Below, in pieces: positions 540-52,445 of a stretch of 64,000 nucleotides of DNA; the stretch's first letter is position 1; every line of letters starts with the position of its first letter. A program made the position numbers and the translations under genes. The notes under the pieces were generated by a model, which saw nothing but the letters and a program-made list of their open reading frames with translations, ran no database searches and had not been told where the DNA came from. Location of the stretch: the IMG/VR virus record IMGVR_UViG_3300044633_000899, positions 232,331 through 296,330 of that record; one strand, given 5' to 3'.

Positions 540-1847
540 ATGAGTAGACAACAATTTACGGCAAGAAATAATATTGGTAGTGTGTTAACATTTCAAAAGA
601 GTGGTGCGACCGCGTCTTTTGATCCTTTTGTTTCATTTAGTAGTGGTTCACGACGTGTTTCTTGGAAATTAGATAATGGTACAAATGTTACTCAAACCGC
701 AGGTAATGGTATTACTTATACTGGATTTACTTCAGATACTGGAATTAGGACAATACAAATGAAAGGTAATAGTTTTAGGGATATAAACTTTTTTAGATTA
801 GATAATGATAATTTATATGGTCATTTAGATCTAACCCAATTATCAGAGTTGAGTAATGTTTTTAGGGTGGATGGTAATATAAATTTAACCGGTATTACAC
901 ACGCGCCGTCATCACAAAATTTCTTACAATACCAAGCTAATAATTGTAAACTGACAGGAAATTTAGATTTAACACCATTATCTGGGTTAGGTGGTAGCTT
1001 TCAGGTTTCTAGTAATATAAATTTAACCGGTATTACACACGCGCCGTCATCACAAAATTTCTCACAATACATTGCTAATAATTGTAACCTAACCGGAAAT
1101 TTAGATTTAACACCATTGTCTGGGTTAGGTGGTGGGTTTTGGTTATATACAAACCCAAAATTAACTGGAATAACACACACACAATCATCACAAATTTTTA
1201 GTAATTATTACGCACAGTTTTGTAATCTAATAGGAATTTTAGATTTAACACCATTGTCTGGATTAGGTGGTGATATTAGAATTAATTCTAATACTGGTTT
1301 AACCAATGTAAACTTTACTATAAGTACACAAAACATAACAGCGTTAGCCTTGGACGGGTGTGACATAACGGGAGAAATAGATTTATCACCATTAACAAAA
1401 TTAGGCGCATCAAGCAGTGGTGTCACATTTAGTTGGGTGAGTTTACATACAAACCCAAACTTAACTAGTGTTATTTTCCCAAATACCAATCAGTTTTTTA
1501 AAAATGGTGTAGGGGGTGCCGAAGTGGTTAGCGTTTTTAGGTTATATGGTTGTAACTTAGATTACGTTGACTTTACCCCACTATCAGGTGCAACATTAGT
1601 GTCTGGTACAACACAAGGAAGACCAAGAATATCATTACGAGATAACAATATGTTAGCAGCAGATGTTAACCATATATTAGTTGATTTCAGTGGAAACACA
1701 ACATATAACCCAACAGGGTGGTCAAATGTAAATTTAAATATTGGAGGAACAAACGATCCCCCAGACTCATTTTCGGGTGGATATGATGGTTTAGCTGCAA
1801 TAAGTTTTTTAACGGGTTCACCGTATAATTGGATAATAACAACGTAA
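540..1847 (+). CDS. Leucine-rich-repeat-like beta-solenoid protein with 46-aa repeats, probable virion/receptor-binding accessory protein
   Basis: Repeated LxGxLDLTPLSGLGGxFxxxxNxNLTGITH units; lies directly after a fibre-like gene. Confidence 0.55.
   Translation: MSRQQFTARNNIGSVLTFQKSGATASFDPFVSFSSGSRRVSWKLDNGTNVTQTAGNGITYTGFTSDTGIRTIQMKGNSFRDINFFRLDNDNLYGHLDLTQLSELSNVFRVDGNINLTGITHAPSSQNFLQYQANNCKLTGNLDLTPLSGLGGSFQVSSNINLTGITHAPSSQNFSQYIANNCNLTGNLDLTPLSGLGGGFWLYTNPKLTGITHTQSSQIFSNYYAQFCNLIGILDLTPLSGLGGDIRINSNTGLTNVNFTISTQNITALALDGCDITGEIDLSPLTKLGASSSGVTFSWVSLHTNPNLTSVIFPNTNQFFKNGVGGAEVVSVFRLYGCNLDYVDFTPLSGATLVSGTTQGRPRISLRDNNMLAADVNHILVDFSGNTTYNPTGWSNVNLNIGGTNDPPDSFSGGYDGLAAISFLTGSPYNWIITT
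813..1395 (+). repeat. 138-bp (46-codon) intragenic tandem repeat, about 4-5 units
   Basis: taatataaatttaaccggtattacacacgcgccgtcatcacaaaatttct occurs at 875 and 1013 (period 138); atttagatttaacaccatt recurs at the same period. Confidence 0.85.
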
Positions 1848-6423: not shown

Positions 6424-6870
6424 TTAACCGATTACCATTAATTTTGGGTTGTAGTTTCTAACTGGGTTTGCGTCACTTATGTTAAACGTTTTGTCTAACC
6501 ACACTTTTATAATTGATTCTGTTTGTTCTGGTGTTAATTTAAAAAAATTTTCTAACACCATCCAAAATTCAGAATTGTTAATAAACATTTTTTTTGTCAA
6601 TAGATTAAAAACTATCAAATTGTCATTTGGTTTTTTGCGAAACAACATTAAATTAGATGATGTTTTACTTATAACCGTTTCTAAATCGTTATACAAATTT
6701 AAAAACTCAAACGGATTGTTGTCAAACCCTTTTGATATGATTGTGTCAATACTATTAAAATATATTAATTTATTCCACCCCTCATTTTTAATCTTATTTT
6801 GGATGATTTCTTTTTCACTTAAAGATTCATTTAATCTTTTGTACTGACTTTCGGATATAATAATTTTCAT
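6424..6870 (-). CDS. Variable-tail family protein, divergent member
   Basis: MKIIISESQYK leader; PFEFLNLYNDL matches the family motif PMDFLNLFNDL; WLD..FN motif followed by a tail of the same length ending IG. Confidence 0.85.
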   Translation of the reverse strand: MKIIISESQYKRLNESLSEKEIIQNKIKNEGWNKLIYFNSIDTIISKGFDNNPFEFLNLYNDLETVISKTSSNLMLFRKKPNDNLIVFNLLTKKMFINNSEFWMVLENFFKLTPEQTESIIKVWLDKTFNISDANPVRNYNPKLMVIG

Positions 6871-6874
6871 ATTG

Positions 6875-6881
6875 ATAAATA
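6875..6881 (-). promoter_or_regulatory. TATTTAT motif, putative late promoter (representative copy; about 22 copies upstream of genes)
   Basis: Coding-strand TATTTAT at 6401, 6875, 7346, 7832, 9391, 9875, 10346 (minus) and 12149, 13773, 15616, 21049, 23028, 35179, 38178, 41494, 46346, 47862, 48988, 51303, 51990, 52422, 61599 (plus), about 4-40 nt before start codons, mainly of structural genes. Confidence 0.7.
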
Positions 6882-6891
6882 TTCTATTTTT

Positions 6892-7341
6892 TCAATTTGT
6901 AGACCTCATCCAATTGTCATCAACACCAATTATCAATGGTATGACATCCCTTAAATTGTGGGTCAACCATTTCTGTATAAGTTTCTGTATATTAGTGTAG
7001 TTAAGACCAAAGTTACCTTCCAAAACTGACCAAATTTCATTATAATTAATATAAACCTCATCACTTTCTCTATCGTGAATGATAAAATTATGACCTTTTT
7101 TAAAACGATATAATGTCCAATATTCTTCTTCTTCACTCTGAACCGATTCCAGATCATTAAATAAGTTTAAGAAATCCATTGGTTCTTTAATGTCAAAAAT
7201 TTCAAGAGTTTTATCCAAGGACCCAACAATCTTTGTTACAGATTCAAAACCAACCTTTTTTATTAAACCCAATAATTTTTCTTTTAAAGAAACGTTTTCT
7301 TTAATTAGTTTGTATTGACTTTCGGTGATGATAATTTTCAT
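6892..7341 (-). CDS. Variable-tail family protein
   Basis: 149 aa, family core PMDFLNLFNDLESVQSEE; ends in the second repeat copy read as WMRSTN*. Confidence 0.9.
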   Translation of the reverse strand: MKIIITESQYKLIKENVSLKEKLLGLIKKVGFESVTKIVGSLDKTLEIFDIKEPMDFLNLFNDLESVQSEEEEYWTLYRFKKGHNFIIHDRESDEVYINYNEIWSVLEGNFGLNYTNIQKLIQKWLTHNLRDVIPLIIGVDDNWMRSTN

Positions 7342-7377
7342 ATTGATAAATATTCTAATTTTTTTAAATTGTAGATA

Positions 7378-7827
7378 TCATTCAATTTTTCCAATTACTT
7401 CCGTGCTGTTTGCGTAGATTCTGACTCCCCTTAAATTGTAGACCTCACCCAACCATATCTCTATAATTTTCTGTCTTTCAGAAAATTTAAGACCAAATTT
7501 ATCTTCCAATACTGACCAAATTTCATCAGAATTGATATAAACAGAATCATTTTTTCTATCGTAAACCATAAAGTTATGACCTTTTCTATAACGATACAAT
7601 GTCCAATTTTCATCTTCCTCACTCTGAACCGATTCCAAATCATTAAATAAATTTAAGAAATCCATCGGTTCTTTGACATCAAAGATTTCAAATGTTTTAT
7701 CCAAAGATCCAACAATCTTTGTTACAGATTTAAAACCAACTTTTTTTATTAAACCCAACAATTTTTCCTTTAAAGAAACGTTTTCTTTGATTAGTTTGTA
7801 TTGACTTTCGGATATAATAATTTTCAT
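7378..7827 (-). CDS. Variable-tail family protein
   Basis: 149 aa, family core; WLGEVYNLRGVR plus unique tail IYANSTEVIGKIE*. Confidence 0.9.
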   Translation of the reverse strand: MKIIISESQYKLIKENVSLKEKLLGLIKKVGFKSVTKIVGSLDKTFEIFDVKEPMDFLNLFNDLESVQSEEDENWTLYRYRKGHNFMVYDRKNDSVYINSDEIWSVLEDKFGLKFSERQKIIEIWLGEVYNLRGVRIYANSTEVIGKIE

Positions 7828-7862
7828 ATTGATAAATATTCTAATTTTTTAAATTGTAGACC

Positions 7863-9386
7863 TCATCCAGTAAAGAAATCCATTGGCATAAATACAAATT
7901 TAGGTGTGACTCCCCTTAAATTGTAGACCTCATCCAACCACCTCTCTGTAAGTTTTTGTATTTCAGAGTAGTTAAGACCAAATTTATCTTCCAAAACTGA
8001 CCAAATTTCATCATAATTGATATAAACATAATCCTTTTTTCTATCGTAAATCATTATATTATGATCTTTTTTATAACGAAATAATATCCAATTTTCTTTT
8101 TCTTCAGATTGGGTACCTTTCAAATCATTAAATAGATGTAAGAAATCCATCGGTTCTTTAATGTCAAAAATTTTAAATAAATTATCCAAGGATCCAACAA
8201 TTTTTGTTACAGATTCAAAACCAACTTTTTTGATTAAACCCAATAATTTTTCTTTTAAAGATATTGATTCATTTAATGGTTTTTTATTATCCTCTTTTTT
8301 TGTTTTTGAGATATATAAATCATTAACAAATTCCCAATTAACACAATTCCAAAAGTTTTTAATATATTCGTCACGTTTATTTTGATATTTTAAATAATAC
8401 GCGTGTTCCCAGACATCCAACCCCAACAATGGATAACCACCATCTTTAATGATATTCATTAATGGATTATCTTGATTTGGTGTGGACATAATTTTAAGTC
8501 TATTTGTTTTTGTTAAGACAAGCCAAACCCAACCAGAACCAAATCTATCTTTTGCAATTTGGTTAAACTCATCTTTCATCTTTTTTATATTACCATATTG
8601 TTTGGTAATTTTATCAAAAATTTCACCCTTTGGTATTTGTTTCTTTGGTGACAACATCTTCCAAAACAAAGCGTGGTTAAAAGCACCCCCAGCGTTGTTT
8701 CGTACTTTCTCATCAAATTTACTAATTGATTTTATAATATCTTCTAATTCAAGATCTTTATGTTTTTTTTCAGATAAAGCATCATTTAATTTTTTAACAT
8801 AACCTTTATAATGTTTGTTGTAATGAATATCCATCGTTTTTGGATCAACAAATTGTTTTAATGCGGAATATGAATATGGTAATTTTTCAATACCAATTTT
8901 TTTCATTTCCATAATAAACTCTTCTTTGATGTTTTCTTTTTCCGTTAAGAGAATTTGTTCTGAGATAAGATTAATTTTATTAACTATTTTTTCTGAACAC
9001 TCAAAAACCAATTGATTATAATCTGGGTATTCTTTTTCAAACATTTTTATTAATCTACCAGCAAAAGCGTTTGCCTCATCTTCATTTTGACCACCAATAT
9101 CTGGTCCTCGTTCTCTACCTAAAGAAAAACGTTGGTGTGCGTGAACCCACTCGTGAGCCAAGGTTCTCATAATGTCACGATTTAATCTATTTTTTGATAA
9201 AATTTTTAATGTACCGTCCATACTCTGACTACCAGTTGACATTTGACCCATTTTATCACCCAAAAACAAAATTGTTAAATCTTGATTAACAGGATAATGA
9301 TTACCTAAAAACTTGATAAAATCATTGTACATTTTTTTATCGTTAGCATCAAGTCCAGAATCATTATGTTTAATTGTGATTTTCAT
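7863..9386 (-). CDS. sodA: Tripartite fusion: HExxH zincin-like domain + Mn-type (Fe/Mn family) superoxide dismutase + variable-tail family domain
   Basis: TLAHEWVH...EDEANAFAG (aa ~75-110); SOD motifs LPYSYSAL, HYNKH, NNAGGAFNH, FGSGWVWL, NQDNP, DVWEHAYY (GG and NQD point to the Mn type); the last ~135 aa are a variable-tail domain. Confidence 0.9.
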   Translation of the reverse strand: MKITIKHNDSGLDANDKKMYNDFIKFLGNHYPVNQDLTILFLGDKMGQMSTGSQSMDGTLKILSKNRLNRDIMRTLAHEWVHAHQRFSLGRERGPDIGGQNEDEANAFAGRLIKMFEKEYPDYNQLVFECSEKIVNKINLISEQILLTEKENIKEEFIMEMKKIGIEKLPYSYSALKQFVDPKTMDIHYNKHYKGYVKKLNDALSEKKHKDLELEDIIKSISKFDEKVRNNAGGAFNHALFWKMLSPKKQIPKGEIFDKITKQYGNIKKMKDEFNQIAKDRFGSGWVWLVLTKTNRLKIMSTPNQDNPLMNIIKDGGYPLLGLDVWEHAYYLKYQNKRDEYIKNFWNCVNWEFVNDLYISKTKKEDNKKPLNESISLKEKLLGLIKKVGFESVTKIVGSLDNLFKIFDIKEPMDFLHLFNDLKGTQSEEKENWILFRYKKDHNIMIYDRKKDYVYINYDEIWSVLEDKFGLNYSEIQKLTERWLDEVYNLRGVTPKFVFMPMDFFTG

Positions 9387-9423
9387 AATTATAAATATCT
9401 AATGATTGTAAAATATAGTTTTA

Positions 9424-9870
9424 TTAAATCATAGATATCATCCAATCCCAATTCTGAAAGTTCTCAAAAACCCAAGTCGGTCTGGTTCTCTTTAAATTGT
9501 AGGTATCATCCAACCAATCCTTAATAAGGTTACTTATATCATAATAGTTTGTTAAATGTTTCTGTTCTAAAACTGACCAAATGTCACCATAATTGATATA
9601 AACAGCATCACTTCTTCTGTCGTGAATCATAATGTTATAACCTTTTTTATAACGATATAATGTCCAAGATGGTCTTTCCTCACTCTGAATTACATCCAAT
9701 TCATTAAATAAATTTAAGAAATCCATCGGTTCTTTGATATCCAAAATTTCAAGTGTTTTATCCAAGGATCCAACAATTTTTGTTGTGGACTTAAAACCAA
9801 TTTTTTTAACTAAACCTAGTAATTTTTCTTTAATCGATTTATATTGATTTTCGGTTATAATAATTTTCAT
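9424..9870 (-). CDS. Variable-tail family protein
   Basis: 148 aa, family core; WLDDTYNLKRTR plus unique tail ending WMISMI*. Confidence 0.9.
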   Translation of the reverse strand: MKIIITENQYKSIKEKLLGLVKKIGFKSTTKIVGSLDKTLEILDIKEPMDFLNLFNELDVIQSEERPSWTLYRYKKGYNIMIHDRRSDAVYINYGDIWSVLEQKHLTNYYDISNLIKDWLDDTYNLKRTRPTWVFENFQNWDWMISMI

Positions 9871-9891
9871 ATTGATAAATATTTCACTTTT

Positions 9892-10341
9892 TTAAATTGT
9901 GGTGTTGTGTATACCAACAATATGGTTATACGTTGTGATTCCCTTTAAATCATAGACCTCATCCAACCACGTTTCTACAAGGGTTGTAATGTCACCAAAG
10001 TTAATATCAAAATTATCTTCCAAAATTGTCCATATTTCGTCATAATTAATGAAAACATATTTAATTTTTCTATCGTAAATCATAAAATTATGACCTTTTT
10101 TATATCTATACAATACCCAATTTGGTTCTTCTTCACTCTGAACAACATCCAAATCATTAAATAAGTTCAAGAAATCCATTGGTTCTTTAATATCAAAGAT
10201 ATCAAAAGTTTTATCCAAAGACCCAACAACTCTTATCGTTGATTCAAATCCAACCTTTTTGATTAAACTCAATAATTTTTCTTTTAAAGAAACGTTTTCT
10301 TTGATTAGTTTGTATTGACTTTCGGTTATTATTATTCGCAT
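9892..10341 (-). CDS. Variable-tail family protein
   Basis: 149 aa, family core; WLDEVYDLKGIT plus unique tail TYNHIVGIHNTTI*. Confidence 0.9.
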   Translation of the reverse strand: MRIIITESQYKLIKENVSLKEKLLSLIKKVGFESTIRVVGSLDKTFDIFDIKEPMDFLNLFNDLDVVQSEEEPNWVLYRYKKGHNFMIYDRKIKYVFINYDEIWTILEDNFDINFGDITTLVETWLDEVYDLKGITTYNHIVGIHNTTI

Positions 10342-35428: not shown

Positions 35429-36100
35429 ATGTCTATTGATAAAAAAATATTAGAAGAAATTGCAAGGTTTAATAATATAAATAATTATATTTTAGAACAA
35501 GAAGATCCGAATATGATACCACCTGCGGATCCTAACGCAATGCCGCCTGCTGACCCGAATATGATGCCACCGGCCGACCCTAACGCGATGCCACCTGCTG
35601 ACCCAAATGCCGCACCACCAGCCGATCCGAACGCACCACCAGCAGCACCAACACCAATTGATGTTGAAGCAGACAAAGACGTTGAAGTTATTGGTGATGA
35701 TGAAAATGAAGAATTAGAAATAACTGATCTTGTTGATTCACAAAAAAGTATTGGTGAGAAACAAGACGAATATTTTGATAATTTATTTGCACAAATAAAA
35801 GGTCTTGAAGAAAAATTATCGGCAATGGATCAATTAGTTTCAAAGATAGATAACTTAGAAACAAACATTGAGAAAATGAGACCTAAAACACCACAAGAAA
35901 AACTTGAATTAAGAAGTTTGGATTCTGGACCATTTAATCAAAAACTATCAGATTTTTTCACAGACAAACAAGAAGACTTTGAAAAAACTGGAAAAGAATA
36001 TGTATTAACAACAGATGATGTTGAACAATATTCTGGAAACCAAATTAAAGACTCATTCACCGATTACGAAGACAATGAGGAAGACACTGAAATGATGTAA
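35429..36100 (+). CDS. Acidic coiled-coil protein with PPADPN repeats, possible scaffold/internal head protein
   Basis: Five PPADPN[AM]x units after a leader ending YILE|Q; acidic coiled-coil C-terminal half. Confidence 0.6.
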   Translation: MSIDKKILEEIARFNNINNYILEQEDPNMIPPADPNAMPPADPNMMPPADPNAMPPADPNAAPPADPNAPPAAPTPIDVEADKDVEVIGDDENEELEITDLVDSQKSIGEKQDEYFDNLFAQIKGLEEKLSAMDQLVSKIDNLETNIEKMRPKTPQEKLELRSLDSGPFNQKLSDFFTDKQEDFEKTGKEYVLTTDDVEQYSGNQIKDSFTDYEDNEEDTEMM

Positions 36101-49463: not shown

Positions 49464-51302
49464 ATGGCAGAGAAAAAGATTTCATATACGGCTAGGGATT
49501 TCCAAACGATTAGAACGGAATTAATAAATTTTACACGAACGTATTATCCAGATTTAATCCAGAACTTTAATGATGCTGGTGTTTTTTCTGTTTTAATGGA
49601 TTTGAACGCGGCGGTAACTGATAATCTACAATTCCAAATAGATAGAAGTATTCAAGAAACGGTATTACAATACGCACAACAAAAATCATCAATTTATAAC
49701 ATAGCAAGAACATACGGATTAAAAATCCCTGGTCAACGACCTTCTGTTGCGTTAACTGATTTCTCAATTACGGTACCAGCGTTTGGTGATAAAGAAGATT
49801 TAAGATATTGTGGTATATTAAGACGAGGATCGCAAGTATCTGGTGCTGGACAACCATTTGAAACTGTTTATGATATTGATTTTGCATCACCATTAAATGG
49901 TGAGGGTTCACCAAATAGACTTAAAATACCAAATTTTGATTCAAACGGTAAAATTTTAAATTATACAATAACAAAAAGAGAGGTTGTTGTTAATGGGACA
50001 ACAAAGGTATTTAAGAGAGTTATTACACCAAATGATGTAAAACCTTATTTTGAATTATTCTTACCAGAAAAAAATGTTTTGGGAATAACAAGTGTTTTAT
50101 TAAAAGATGGTACACAATATACAACAATACCTGAACCACAAGAATTTCTTGGGTTGGATAACAGATGGTATGAAGTTAAAGCGTTGGCCGAAGATAGAGT
50201 GTTCATTGAGGACCCAACAAAGGTATCAGACCAACCTGGTGTTAAAGTAGGTAAATATATCACAACTAACACTAAATTCATTAGTGAATACACACCAGAA
50301 GGTTATCTAAAAATGACATTTGGTGGTGGTAATGTTTCGGCTGAAGAACAATTAAGAGAATTTACAAGAACTGGTAATTCATTTGATTTAAACAAATACT
50401 CAAACAATCTAGCACTAGGTGCTGCGTTAAAGTCAAACTCTACTTTATTTATTCAATATAGAATTGGTGGTGGACAATCAACAAACCTTGGATCAAATGT
50501 GATTACACAGATTGGTACGGTTTCGTTTTTTGTTAATGGACCATCAGAAACGATTAATAAAAGTGTTATTAATACATTAAGATGTAATAACGTGACAGCA
50601 GCAATAGGAGGGGCGAACGCACCAACAACTGAAGACGTAAGACAAATGGTTTCATTTAATTTTGCGGCACAAAACAGAGCGGTAACAATTAATGATTATG
50701 AATCAATAATAAAAACAATGCCATCACAATTTGGTGCACCAGCAAAAGTTGCGATAACTGAAGAAAACAATAAGATAAAAGTTAAAATGTTATCTTATGA
50801 TAGTAATGGTAATTTAACTGATACAATATCAAACACACTAAAAAGTAATTTATCAAATTATTTATCAAACTATAGAATGATAAATGATTATATCTCAATT
50901 GAGAGTGCAAACCCAATTGATCTATCTGTTGATGTTGATGTTGTATTAGACGCGACACAAAACCAAGGTGCTATCATATCAAAATTAATTAATATTGTAA
51001 CAACATTCTTTAGTCCAACAAATAGACAATTAGGACAAAACGTTAACGTATCTGAATTAAGAAGAATTATCCAGAACGAAAATGGAATTGTGAGTATTTC
51101 GGATTTAAGGTTTTTTAATAAGGTTGGGGGTCAGTATTCTTCATATCAGACATCACAAAGGTATTCCGATTTATCAACAAAACAAATTGAATTAATTAAT
51201 GATACGATATTTGCGGAACCAACACAGACTTATCAAGTTAGGTTTCCGAATAAGGATATTAATGTTAGGGTAATAAACTTAAAAACTGTGAATTTTTCAT
51301 AA
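49464..51302 (+). CDS. Baseplate wedge protein gp6/J-like
   Basis: RDFQTIR, FIQYRIGGGQSTN, AAIGGANA, QNRAVTINDY. Confidence 0.88.
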   Translation: MAEKKISYTARDFQTIRTELINFTRTYYPDLIQNFNDAGVFSVLMDLNAAVTDNLQFQIDRSIQETVLQYAQQKSSIYNIARTYGLKIPGQRPSVALTDFSITVPAFGDKEDLRYCGILRRGSQVSGAGQPFETVYDIDFASPLNGEGSPNRLKIPNFDSNGKILNYTITKREVVVNGTTKVFKRVITPNDVKPYFELFLPEKNVLGITSVLLKDGTQYTTIPEPQEFLGLDNRWYEVKALAEDRVFIEDPTKVSDQPGVKVGKYITTNTKFISEYTPEGYLKMTFGGGNVSAEEQLREFTRTGNSFDLNKYSNNLALGAALKSNSTLFIQYRIGGGQSTNLGSNVITQIGTVSFFVNGPSETINKSVINTLRCNNVTAAIGGANAPTTEDVRQMVSFNFAAQNRAVTINDYESIIKTMPSQFGAPAKVAITEENNKIKVKMLSYDSNGNLTDTISNTLKSNLSNYLSNYRMINDYISIESANPIDLSVDVDVVLDATQNQGAIISKLINIVTTFFSPTNRQLGQNVNVSELRRIIQNENGIVSISDLRFFNKVGGQYSSYQTSQRYSDLSTKQIELINDTIFAEPTQTYQVRFPNKDINVRVINLKTVNFS

Positions 51303-51313
51303 TATTTATTGAT

Positions 51314-51832
51314 ATGAAAATAATTATAACCGAAAATCAATACAAGTTAATTAAAGAAAACATTTCTTTAAAAGAAAAATTAAAGGACTTAATCAAAAAG
51401 GTTGGTTTTGAATCAATGGTAAGAGTTGTTGGATCCTTGGATAAAACGTTTGAAATCTTTGATGTCAAAGAACCGATGGATTTCTTAAATTTATTTAATG
51501 ATTTGGAATCGGTTCAGAGTGAAGAACGTGAAGATTGGACGTTATATCGTTATAAAAAAGGACATAATTTTATAGTTTACAATAGAAAAAATGATTATGT
51601 TCATATCAATTATGATGAAATTTGGTCAGTTTTAGAAGACAATTTTGGACTTAACTACTCTGAAACACAGAAACTTACAAAGAGATGGTTGGATGAGGTC
51701 TACAATTTAAGGGGAGTCACACCTTATATTTTTGACTTAACATCAACAGGGTTAAGGTTGGATGAGGTCTACAATTTAAGGGGAGTCACACCTCGCGAAA
51801 ATATATCGTTCGATATGTCTCGGATTGGATGA
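51314..51832 (+). CDS. Variable-tail family protein with duplicated tail unit
   Basis: 172 aa; family core; ...WLDEVYNLRGVT-PYIFDLTSTGLR-LDEVYNLRGVT-PRENISFDMSR-IG*. Confidence 0.9.
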   Translation: MKIIITENQYKLIKENISLKEKLKDLIKKVGFESMVRVVGSLDKTFEIFDVKEPMDFLNLFNDLESVQSEEREDWTLYRYKKGHNFIVYNRKNDYVHINYDEIWSVLEDNFGLNYSETQKLTKRWLDEVYNLRGVTPYIFDLTSTGLRLDEVYNLRGVTPRENISFDMSRIG

Positions 51833-51856
51833 GGTCTACAATTTAAGGGGAGTCAC
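51687..51856 (+). repeat. CRISPR-like repeat-spacer mini-array inside and beyond a CDS (3 x 34 bp; 35- and 33-nt unrelated spacers)
   Basis: GGTTGGATGAGGTCTACAATTTAAGGGGAGTCAC at 51687-51720 and 51756-51789 (identical) and 51823-51856 (1 mismatch); no cas genes in the window. Confidence 0.92.
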
Positions 51857-52023
51857 CGTCTATTGTAATATTTCCACAAAAAAGACATTTTTGTGAAACA
51901 ACACCAATCTTTTACTTTTTCACAAACAAGATTATTCTTTGAAAATAGGAAATAAACTTAAAAAGTGTAAATTTTTCATAACATCAATATATTTATATTG
52001 TAAATAATAAATAAAAAAAAACG

Positions 52024-52326
52024 ATGAAAAAAACAGTTAGATTAACAGAAAGAGATTTAACAAGAATTGTTAAAAGAGTAATTAAAGAAGGTAGTGAAAA
52101 CATTGAAGATTTACGACACGAAAGATTAGACCTACTAAAAAGAATTAAAAGATTTGCAAACAAATCTTATAATTTAGAAAACACGGTAGATATTGATTTA
52201 GAAAACACGGTAGATATGGATGATGACGATATGTATGGTGTTGGTGAATGTGTTGAAACTGCAGACGAACTGCTCAAAGCCTTGAAAAGAATTGGTGAAG
52301 ATCACGATATTAACGATTTTGAATAA
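52024..52326 (+). CDS. Acidic protein with LTExDLxRIV leader
   Basis: MKKTVRLTERDLTRIVKRVIKEG; internal 24-bp duplication (LENTVDID/LENTVDMD). Confidence 0.75.
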   Translation: MKKTVRLTERDLTRIVKRVIKEGSENIEDLRHERLDLLKRIKRFANKSYNLENTVDIDLENTVDMDDDDMYGVGECVETADELLKALKRIGEDHDINDFE

Positions 52327-52337
52327 ATTTTAAATTA

Positions 52338-52368
52338 AAAAAACCCCAATCTCAAGTTGGGGTTTTTT
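52338..52368 (+). terminator. Rho-independent terminator
   Basis: AAAAAACCCCAA-tctcaag-TTGGGGTTTTTT. Confidence 0.85.
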
Positions 52369-52445
52369 ATTTCTTTTACTTTTTCACAAACAAGATTATT
52401 CTTTGAAAATAGGAAATAAACTATTTATCAAAAAAGAAGGAATTA

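What the first reader, a model, noticed from the sequence alone, without database searches (positions are those of the whole stretch)
51687..51896. Three-repeat array stores a silent, ready-made alternative C-terminus
Seen: R-S1-R-S2-R (periods 69 and 67). S1 reads through, and S2 shifts the frame so the protein stops in R3. Read in the coding frame of the repeat, R3 continues LDEVYNLRGVT-VYCNISTKKTFL* (TGA at 51894-51896): an untranslated tail of similar length, sharing NIS at the same offset as S2 (PRENIS/VYCNIS). Inference: deletion between repeats gives three alternative products (S1+S2, S2 only, S3 only), i.e. cassette-type phase variation. Unequal crossover between a terminal repeat and an internal repeat of another paralogue would build such an array without Cas1-Cas2. 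An 8-bp hairpin (51875-51895) overlaps the silent tail.
Basis: partly seen in the sequence, partly recalled or inferred. Interest (0 to 1): 0.9.

Follow-up and report, generated by a model that had tools for sequence, protein, structure and literature searches.

The report
Phage CRISPR-like array fused to gene
The three repeats are a small CRISPR-type array, with repeats resembling those used by the RNA-cutting enzyme Cas13b, carried by a giant phage and fused to the end of a phage gene, so that each inserted spacer also becomes that protein's tail.

Summary
There are three copies of a 36-nt repeat (51688, 51757, 51824) with a 33-nt and a 31-nt spacer. The ORF 51314..51832 reads through spacer 1 and stops at a TGA in repeat 3.

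The same repeat forms 1-6-unit arrays behind about 50 paralogues and orthologues of this gene in related ~300-kb freshwater phages. The 65 non-redundant spacers are unrelated to each other and mostly 29-33 nt long. New units appear at the gene-proximal end, and the last repeat is degenerate.

The repeat has the type VI-B (Cas13b) repeat length and 5' end. It is 21-24/36 identical to two real Cas13b repeats, which is as close as those two are to each other.

It is the gene's original tail plus a conserved flank. Natural alleles with no spacer (S3 translated), with S2 only, and with five other spacers all exist.

Every spacer lacks stop codons in its first five codons, so spacers have been filtered as translated tails.

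No cas gene, host repeat or protospacer was found. How spacers are acquired (host Cas1-Cas2?) and what the array does (decoy or guide for Cas13b?) are therefore inferred, not shown.

The parts
51314..51832 (+). ORF (172 aa), one member of a multicopy phage protein family of unknown function. Its last 46 codons are encoded by R1-S1-R2-S2 and the start of R3.
   Evidence: 1152 homologues. AF2 model has pLDDT ~90 for residues 11-140 and <50 for 142-172. No Pfam, PHROG, PADLOC, PDB or BFVD assignment.
51688..51723 (+). Repeat 1 (36 nt). It also encodes (W)LDEVYNLRGVTP, the end of the last helix and the linker of the protein.
   Evidence: Third-codon-position identity among 33 homologous genes is 0.94 in the repeat against 0.74 in the gene body.
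51724..51756 (+). Spacer 1 (33 nt, keeps the reading frame). It is translated as YIFDLTSTGLR and is the newest unit, absent from allele L072.
   Evidence: No match elsewhere.
51757..51792 (+). Repeat 2, identical to repeat 1, translated in frame as LDEVYNLRGVTP.
51793..51823 (+). Spacer 2 (31 nt, shifts the frame by +1). It is translated as RENISFDMSR. With one mismatch, it is the only spacer in alleles L072/L073.
   Evidence: (P0064).
51824..51859 (+). Terminal repeat (ATTGG...GTCACCGT). It contains the ORF's stop codon TGA at 51830-51832. Its 3' end is the form seen in the spacer-free allele.
51860..51907 (+). It is the original tail VYCNISTKKTFL* of the gene, with the hairpin at 51875-51895. 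It is not translated in this allele.
   Evidence: The same flank follows the terminal repeat in L054, L006/L032, L072/73, L074 and L075. It is translated in P0022.
6424..10341 (-). Tandem cluster of six paralogues (one fused to a superoxide dismutase). Each carries a repeat, one spacer and a truncated 23-nt terminal repeat, and some are degenerate. The best-preserved copy has R at 7938-7903, spacer at 7902-7872 and R' at 7871-7849.

Best explanation
The locus is a small CRISPR-type repeat-spacer array of the type VI-B (Cas13b) repeat family. It is carried by a ~296-kb T4-like jumbo phage that has no cas gene in the 64 kb examined.

The unusual feature is that the array has no non-coding leader. 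Its first repeat is the 3' end of a multicopy phage gene. Each spacer inserted next to the gene is therefore translated as the protein's C-terminal tail. Translation then ends in the next repeat, which has TGA and TAA in its two other frames, unless the spacer length is a multiple of 3 and translation reads on.

Shown here:
- the repeat-spacer architecture;
- unrelated spacers of uniform size;
- addition at the gene-proximal end, with copying of the first repeat;
- a degenerate terminal repeat;
- alleles with 0, 1, 2 and 5 spacers at this one locus;
- sequence kinship of the repeat to Cas13b repeats;
- a protein-level filter on spacers (no stop in the first five codons).

Inferred:
- spacers are inserted by a Cas1-Cas2 integrase, probably the host's, acting in trans as described for Flavobacterium columnare VI-B arrays;
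- arrays shrink, and spread between paralogues, by homologous recombination between repeats;
- the transcripts supply Cas13b-binding RNAs that either soak up host Cas13b (an RNA anti-CRISPR-like decoy) or arm it against competing phages.
For: Architecture. 49 distinct arrays with 70 unique spacers lie behind homologues of this gene. Periods run from 59 to 71, mostly 65-68, and are not multiples of 3. The spacers are mutually unrelated: in-register identity is 27.6% against 27.2% for shuffles.

Polarity.
- The window array equals L072's plus one gene-proximal unit.
- L004 and L007 differ only in the first spacer.
- L011/L012 and L009/L025 share distal spacers.
- Proteins P0104, P0105 and P0107 form the same kind of series.

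Local copying. Array-specific repeat variants are shared within arrays, and derived mutations sit in the proximal copies (L076, L080, L025, L167, L168).

Repeat family. The repeat is 36 nt with 5'-GTTG, and has 3'-CAAC in related arrays. It is 21-24/36 identical to the PspCas13b repeat (text hit) and to the Cas13b repeat in the pC13B vector. Those two are 22/36 identical to each other. Between 0 and 8 of 200,000 shuffles reach these values. RNAfold gives the same stem-loop topology as for the Psp repeat. The definition of VI-B repeats is taken from bioRxiv 10.1101/092577.

Spacer character.
- Spacers look like pieces of coding DNA from either strand: A equals T, and 3 spacer-strand combinations lack an open frame against about 12.6 expected.
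- There are 0 stops in codons 2-6 of the repeat's frame against 23.4 +/- 4.5 in shuffles.
- This fits the AF2 strand at residues 136-140.

Precedents. VI-B arrays can acquire spacers in trans through II-C Cas1-Cas2 (PMC8092290). Excess repeat-bearing RNA sequesters Cas13b (PMC13187072). Phage arrays without cas genes are known (PMC7162821; PMC11656645).
Against: - No cas gene was found among about 40 window ORFs scanned.
- No bacterial array carries this repeat: a 24-mer scan of 185,579 species genomes hit only a 1.8-kb phage-like contig binned with a Flavobacterium MAG.
- No protospacer was found. I compared all spacers with ~680 kb of related phage DNA. I ran exact IMG/VR or metagenome scans for three spacers. 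I searched ten spacers against INPHARED. The one 20-nt partial match to a gp46-like gene is not supported by 80 homologues.
- The window's repeat ends in CACC, not CAAC. It folds weakly (-2.1 kcal/mol against -11.3 for the Psp repeat, no better than shuffles).
- No Rfam family is hit.
- The reverse complement is almost as similar to Cas13b repeats (17-21/36), so the repeat's orientation rests mainly on the polarity of insertion.
- Many arrays end in a repeat cut after exactly 23 nt, with at least six different flanks. Simple duplication of a full repeat does not explain this.
Confidence: 0.7

Rival explanations
1. This is the reader's model: a Cas-independent cassette store. Unequal crossover between the terminal repeat of one paralogue and the internal repeat of another stacks alternative C-terminal tails. 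Deletion between repeats then switches which tail is expressed, giving phase variation of the protein.
For: - There are many paralogues with R-S-R' ends, some in tandem.
- The phage encodes gp32, a UvsX/RecA-like protein and a gp46-like nuclease.
- Natural alleles express S2 alone or the 'S3' tail.
- All spacers are stop-free for five codons in the repeat's frame.
- One spacer is shared by two paralogues in one genome (L019 and window 6892..7341).
- The truncated 23-nt terminal repeats are easiest to explain by crossovers within the repeat core.
Against: - Recombination only shuffles existing sequence. It cannot create 65 unrelated spacers of mostly 29-33 nt.
- The window's S1 is absent from every other array found in the same genome or in relatives.
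- Growth is polar and copies the local first repeat.
- The repeat is kin to Cas13b repeats.
- Tails are predicted to be disordered, and almost any sequence is tolerated after five residues.
- Deletion is irreversible, so this is not phase variation.
Confidence: 0.13
2. The array is an ordinary protein-coding tandem duplication (a minisatellite) of the C-terminal peptide, made by replication slippage, with the inter-repeat parts having since diverged.
For: R2 is translated in frame as a second LDEVYNLRGVTP. Some homologues carry two or three in-frame copies (P0006, P0107).
Against: - About two thirds of the periods are not multiples of 3.
- Repeats are about 100% conserved while spacers are at random-level identity.
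- Repeats are conserved in all three reading frames and at synonymous sites.
- Slippage would duplicate the spacer along with the repeat.
Confidence: 0.03
3. Another ruler-based insertion mechanism, encoded by the phage and unrelated to CRISPR, adds ~31-nt pieces at this gene end. One possibility is that the 148-aa protein itself, or a site-specific nuclease with fill-in synthesis, does this. On this view the resemblance to Cas13b repeats is convergent.
For: Every array found sits behind a copy of this gene. None stands alone or next to cas genes. There is no host repeat and no protospacer. The fold of the protein has no known relative.
Against: - The repeat matches Cas13b repeats in length, ends, loop and 21-24 of 36 bases.
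- The protein has no nuclease or integrase signature and no invariant acidic cluster.
- No precedent is known to me.
Confidence: 0.1

Closest known systems
Type VI-B (Cas13b) CRISPR arrays of Bacteroidota, including the Flavobacterium columnare VI-B array that acquires spacers in trans through II-C Cas1-Cas2 (bioRxiv 10.1101/092577; PMC8092290)
   Same: - The repeat is 36 nt with 5'-GUUG (and CAAC-3' in related arrays) and a U-rich centre.
- Spacers are about 30 nt and units are added at the transcription-proximal end.
- The last repeat is degenerate.
- The repeat is 21-24/36 identical to two Cas13b repeats.
   Different: - The array is on a phage with no cas13b nearby, and there are several arrays per genome.
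- The 'leader' and first repeat are coding sequence.
- The window's repeat ends in CACC and folds weakly.
- The spacer mode is 31 nt rather than 30.
Virus-borne CRISPR mini-arrays and cas-less phage arrays that use host Cas proteins (reviewed in PMC11656645; huge phages in PMC7162821)
   Same: These are short arrays of 1-5 spacers on a viral genome without adaptation or interference genes. Spacer content varies between close relatives.
   Different: Described mini-arrays have repeats identical to the host's and spacers against related viruses. Neither could be shown here. Described ones are intergenic, whereas this one is fused to an ORF.
RNA anti-CRISPRs (Racrs, solitary repeat units; PMC10651486) and the Cas13b-sequestering extraneous crRNA (PMC13187072)
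   Same: A phage-encoded copy of a CRISPR repeat could load or trap the host effector. The first repeat preceded by gene sequence would make exactly an 'extraneous crRNA'.
   Different: Racrs are solitary, intergenic and have their own promoter. The published survey masked ORFs and found candidates for every type except VI. Here the repeats form growing arrays inside mRNAs.
Non-canonical spacer integration creating new arrays at repeat-like genomic sites (recalled from the literature, not checked here)
   Same: A coding sequence that resembles a repeat becomes the seed of an array.
   Different: Here this would have to be recurrent, polar and maintained in many paralogues. It would also be filtered by translation.
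Silent-cassette antigenic variation (pilE/pilS, vlsE) and shufflons
   Same: The C-terminal part of a protein varies, bounded by short repeats, with untranslated alternatives stored downstream.
   Different: Those cassettes are homologous variants moved by gene conversion or inversion. Here the pieces are unrelated, ruler-sized and added at one end, and the tail is disordered.

Membership tests
CRISPR array (generic) | Three or more near-identical direct repeats of 23-47 nt, regularly interspaced by unique spacers of similar length | tested here: met
   The window has 3 x 36 nt with spacers of 33 and 31 nt. Across relatives there are 70 unique spacers, mostly 29-33 nt and mutually unrelated.
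CRISPR array (generic) | Polarised growth: new spacers at one end, shared old spacers at the other, degenerate terminal repeat | tested here: met
   Seen in window vs L072, L004 vs L007, L011 vs L012, L009 vs L025 and P0104/5/7. Terminal repeats are altered or cut. Proximal copies share derived mutations.
CRISPR array (generic) | Spacers match foreign protospacers | tested here: inconclusive
   No full match was found in ~680 kb of related phage DNA, in IMG/VR or metagenome exact scans of three spacers, or in INPHARED for ten spacers. The searches were far from exhaustive.
CRISPR array (generic) | Associated cas genes | tested here: not met
   No Cas family appears among about 40 window ORFs in Pfam or PADLOC. 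The other 232 kb of the genome was not examined. Orphan and viral arrays also lack cas genes.
CRISPR array (generic) | Non-coding AT-rich leader upstream of the first repeat | tested here: not met
   The sequence upstream of R1, and R1 itself, are the coding sequence of a conserved, confidently folded protein.
Type VI-B (Cas13b) direct repeat | 36 nt long, with spacers of about 30 nt | tested here: met
   The repeat is 36 nt. Period modes are 67 and 66.
Type VI-B (Cas13b) direct repeat | Complementary ends 5'-GUUG ... CAAC-3' | tested here: inconclusive
   The window copies read GUUG...CACC (R3: AUUG...CCGU). Related arrays L080, L081, L085, L167 and L168 read GUUG...CAAC.
Type VI-B (Cas13b) direct repeat | Whole repeat folds into a hairpin with a U-rich open loop | tested here: inconclusive
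   The predicted topology is the same as for the PspCas13b repeat. The energy is only -5.0 kcal/mol (CAAC form) or -2.1 kcal/mol (window form) against -11.3, and is no better than shuffles.
Type VI-B (Cas13b) direct repeat | Sequence similarity to known Cas13b repeats | tested here: met
   21-24/36 identical to two Cas13b repeats retrieved from papers. Those two are 22/36 identical to each other. 0-8 of 200,000 shuffles reach this. The reverse complement scores 17-21.
Type VI-B (Cas13b) direct repeat | Bound and processed by Cas13b | not testable with these tools
   This needs RNA-seq of infected cells or an in vitro assay.
RNA anti-CRISPR (Racr / solitary repeat unit) | Solitary, intergenic repeat copy with its own promoter that mimics the host's repeat | tested here: not met
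   The repeats are in arrays and inside an ORF. The host repeat is unknown. A decoy role is still possible in function.
Silent-cassette phase or antigenic variation | Stored cassettes are homologous variants of the expressed segment and are reused | tested here: not met
   The spacers are unrelated to each other and are very rarely shared between loci.

The most novel reading that the evidence does not exclude
A clade of freshwater jumbo phages has domesticated Cas13b-type CRISPR repeats as the coding 3' ends of a multicopy gene. During infection the host's adaptation machinery inserts spacers into phage DNA at these sites. The resulting mRNAs double as Cas13b-binding RNAs that disarm or redirect host type VI immunity. 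Each insertion also has to pass a translational filter, because it rewrites the protein's tail. This would be the first viral type VI repeat system and the first CRISPR array with a protein-coding leader and first repeat.
Probability: 0.4. Interest if true: 0.9.

Novelty: new variant of a known kind. Interest (0 to 1): 0.78.

Why it matters
Phage-borne arrays and repeat decoys are known, but a published survey found none for type VI and deliberately masked ORFs (PMC10651486). If this reading is right, three things follow.
- CRISPR repeats can hide inside genes.
- Spacer integration can act as a generator of protein tails.
- Phages may counter or exploit RNA-targeting Cas13b immunity with their own arrays.

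The locus also offers a natural experiment on dual coding. The same 67-bp units are under DNA- or RNA-level constraint (the repeat) and protein-level constraint (the first five codons of each spacer). It also argues for searching for viral repeat units inside ORFs, not only between them.

Tried and rejected
- Rfam at gathering threshold (whole window) and at E<=10 (51300-52000) gave no CRISPR-DR or other family.
- A search for an anti-repeat (tracrRNA-like partner) in the window found none.
- Protospacer searches all failed:
  - local BLAST of all spacers;
  - a longest-exact-match test, which gave only a small excess over shuffles (12.36 vs 11.76 nt);
  - IMG/VR scans of L025 spacer 3 and of window S1 and S2, which returned only the arrays themselves;
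  - a metagenome scan of S1, with 0 hits;
  - INPHARED with two five-spacer arrays, with chance-level hits only.
- The 20/31-nt match of one spacer to the phage's own gp46-like gene looked promising. None of 80 homologues continues the match, so I treat it as unexplained or chance.
- Protein function: Pfam, PHROGs, PADLOC, PDB sequence search and Foldseek against PDB and BFVD gave nothing usable.
- Ideas considered and dropped for lack of any matching feature: a DGR, a shufflon, a ToxI-like type III antitoxin array, TIGR arrays, translational bypassing, and target-site duplication of a mini-element.
- The nearest cultured phage relatives are only ~23% identical in DNA polymerase (Salinibacter phages). 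The host stays unknown apart from a weak Flavobacterium MAG binning.

Full report
**1. The observation**

Reading 51000-52300 and the repeat finder confirm three copies of a 36-nt unit.
- R1 (51688-51723) and R2 (51757-51792) are identical: GTTGGATGAGGTCTACAATTTAAGGGGAGTCACACC.
- R3 (51824-51859) differs at base 1 and bases 34-36.
- The spacers are 33 nt (51724-51756) and 31 nt (51793-51823), giving periods of 69 and 67.

ORF 51314..51832 (172 aa) reads R1 as (W)LDEVYNLRGVTP. It passes in frame through S1 and R2, is shifted by S2, and stops at TGA 51830-51832 in R3. The hairpin at 51875-51895 and the TGA at 51894-51896 are as described. The same array is present in three independent assemblies (L001-L003).

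**2. Context**

The window is the last 64 kb of a 296,330-bp IMG/VR contig. The phage is T4-like in its replication and recombination genes and its tail genes:
- family B polymerase, SNF2 helicase, sheath, T4 baseplate protein;
- gp32, a RecA/UvsX-like protein, 5'-3' exonuclease, DnaB-like helicase;
- ribonucleotide reductase and a gp46-like nuclease.

It has no close cultured relative. At least 303 IMG/VR contigs carry a relative of the gp46-like gene, so the wider clade is large.

The ORF lies between a baseplate-J-like gene and an 1812-aa gene. It belongs to a family with at least seven copies in the window. Six are in tandem at 6424-10341 on the minus strand, one of them fused to a Fe/Mn superoxide dismutase. 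The family has 1152 homologues in metagenomes.

AlphaFold gives a confident fold for residues 11-140 and a disordered tail from residue 142. Nothing in Pfam, PHROGs, PADLOC, PDB or BFVD names the fold.

**3. What the repeats are**

Scanning related loci changed the picture. The same 36-nt repeat forms arrays of one to six copies behind about 50 distinct copies of this gene. Periods are mostly 65-68 (overall range 59-71), and most are not multiples of three. The repeat is therefore kept in all three reading frames.

Its synonymous positions are much more conserved than those of the gene body (0.94 against 0.74). The 70 spacers (65 non-redundant) are no more alike than shuffled sequences and are mostly 29-33 nt long.

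At the window's own locus, recognisable by the same flanks, there are six alleles:
- no spacer (L074);
- one spacer (L072/73, L006/32 and L075, three different spacers);
- two spacers (the window);
- five spacers (L054).

Only S2 is shared, between the window and L072. The flanking DNA of these alleles is 87-93% identical.

**4. Polarity and copying**

The window array is L072's array plus one unit on the gene side. L004 and L007 differ only in the gene-proximal spacer. L011/L012 and L009/L025 share distal spacers. Proteins P0104, P0105 and P0107 form a series in which one unit is added proximally.

Repeat variants are array-specific: GTTGTTTGAGG in all copies of L076, and CACAAC in all copies of L080. 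Where copies differ, the derived changes are in the gene-proximal copies (L025, L167, L168). This is what duplication of the first repeat at each insertion would give.

**5. Kinship of the repeat**

Type VI-B repeats are defined by four features (bioRxiv 10.1101/092577):
- a length of 36 nt;
- complementary GUUG/CAAC ends;
- a U-rich loop;
- 30-nt spacers, with a spacer-then-repeat crRNA.

The phage repeat is 36 nt and starts with GTTG. It ends in CAAC in several related arrays, though in CACC in the window. It is 21-24/36 identical to the PspCas13b repeat (confirmed by a text hit) and to the Cas13b repeat of the pC13B vector. Those two bona fide repeats are 22/36 identical to each other. Only 0-8 of 200,000 shuffles reach these values.

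RNAfold gives the same stem, inner-stem and 8-nt-loop topology as for the Psp repeat, but much weaker. The window form is nearly unstructured. The reverse complement is almost as similar, as expected for a quasi-palindromic repeat. The orientation therefore rests on the insertion polarity.

**6. The coding twist**

In the frame set by the preceding repeat, none of the 65 spacers has a stop in codons 2-6. Shuffles give 23.4 +/- 4.5, and the other two frames have 25 and 26. From codon 7 on there is no avoidance (17 against 21). This holds for first and for internal spacers.

Every spacer has therefore once been the translated tail and survived a requirement for about five more residues. This fits the predicted strand at 136-140. 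It independently supports insertion next to the gene.

Spacers also look like pieces of coding DNA from either strand. A equals T, unlike the phage's coding strand, and fewer spacers than expected lack an open frame.

**7.

The sequence after R3 is not a spacer. It is the same in all alleles, carries the conserved hairpin, and directly follows the single repeat in the spacer-free allele L074, where it is translated (P0022...RGVTVYCNISTKKTFLW...). It is the gene's original tail, displaced by insertions.

Recombination between repeats could regenerate them. However, this is array contraction, not reversible phase variation.

**8. What is missing**

- No cas gene was found in the window.
- No bacterial array with this repeat was found among 185,579 species genomes. 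The only hit is a 1.8-kb phage-like contig binned in a Flavobacterium MAG.
- No protospacer was found.

The steps 'host Cas1-Cas2 inserts the spacers' and 'the RNA engages Cas13b' are inferences. They rest on the repeat's family and on precedents: acquisition in trans in F. columnare (PMC8092290), sequestration of Cas13b by an extraneous crRNA (PMC13187072), and cas-less phage arrays (PMC7162821; PMC11656645).

One thing remains unexplained. Many arrays end in a repeat cut after exactly 23 nt (ACAATTTAA), followed by at least six different flanks, often just upstream of the next gene's ATG. Full-repeat duplication does not predict this.

**9. Verdict**

This is a real and unusual feature: a CRISPR-type, Cas13b-family repeat-spacer array fused to the 3' end of a multicopy jumbo-phage gene. 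It is hypervariable between relatives, and its spacers are filtered as translated tails.

It is best filed as a new variant of virus-borne cas-less CRISPR arrays. It is not a recombination-built cassette system. A published survey of viral repeat units found none for type VI and masked ORFs, which would explain why this has gone unnoticed.

Noticed in passing
window 51908-51958 and 52372-52422 (ORF 52024..52326 between them): A perfect 51-nt direct repeat brackets a 100-aa ORF and a terminator-like hairpin (52338-52368). Orthologous loci L054, L072 and L074 have a single copy of the 51-mer and no ORF. This looks like a 464-bp gene cassette inserted with duplication of the intergenic segment.
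   Followed up: partly
window 51875-51895; L072 2995-3016: The hairpin after the terminal repeat is conserved, but its loop is the exact reverse complement in alleles L072, L006 and L075 (AAGACAT vs ATGTCTT). This is a hairpin flip between close relatives.
   Followed up: no
window 7863..9386 (-): A 507-aa fusion protein. It has an N-terminal part with an HExxH-like motif, a Fe/Mn superoxide dismutase (Pfam E 6e-40), and a C-terminal copy of the paralogue domain with its own repeat, spacer and truncated repeat.
   Followed up: partly
window 51269-51305 and 51948-51984: A 37-nt element (89% identical) precedes both the array-bearing gene and the inserted 100-aa gene. It may be a shared promoter or regulatory cassette.
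   Followed up: no
L025 spacer 3 vs L049 225-244 (gp46-like gene of the window's own genome): The first 20 nt of one spacer match the phage's gp46-like nuclease gene exactly (BLAST E 9e-6). The last 11 nt do not, in this genome or in 80 homologues. It may be a chimeric spacer or chance.
   Followed up: yes
terminal repeats of many arrays, e.g. window 7871-7849 (-), L016, L018, L080: The last repeat is cut after exactly 23 nt (…ACAATTTAA), with at least six unrelated flanks. It often lies 5-25 nt upstream of the next gene's ATG. Full-repeat duplication does not explain this.
   Followed up: partly
N-termini of ORFs 51314.., 6424-10341 (-), and genes downstream of arrays in L009, L018, L081: The N-terminus MKIIITE[SN]QYK is shared with other small gene families (MKIIITEEQYN...). 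It may be a common targeting or processing signal, with [LI]xE motifs like those of T4 prohead-protease sites. This is speculative.
   Followed up: no
window 874-1271 and 35504-35635: There are in-frame tandem repeats inside ORFs: a 138-nt period x 2.9 in ORF 540..1847, and a 24/48-nt Pro/Ala/Asp-rich period in ORF 35429..36100.
   Followed up: no
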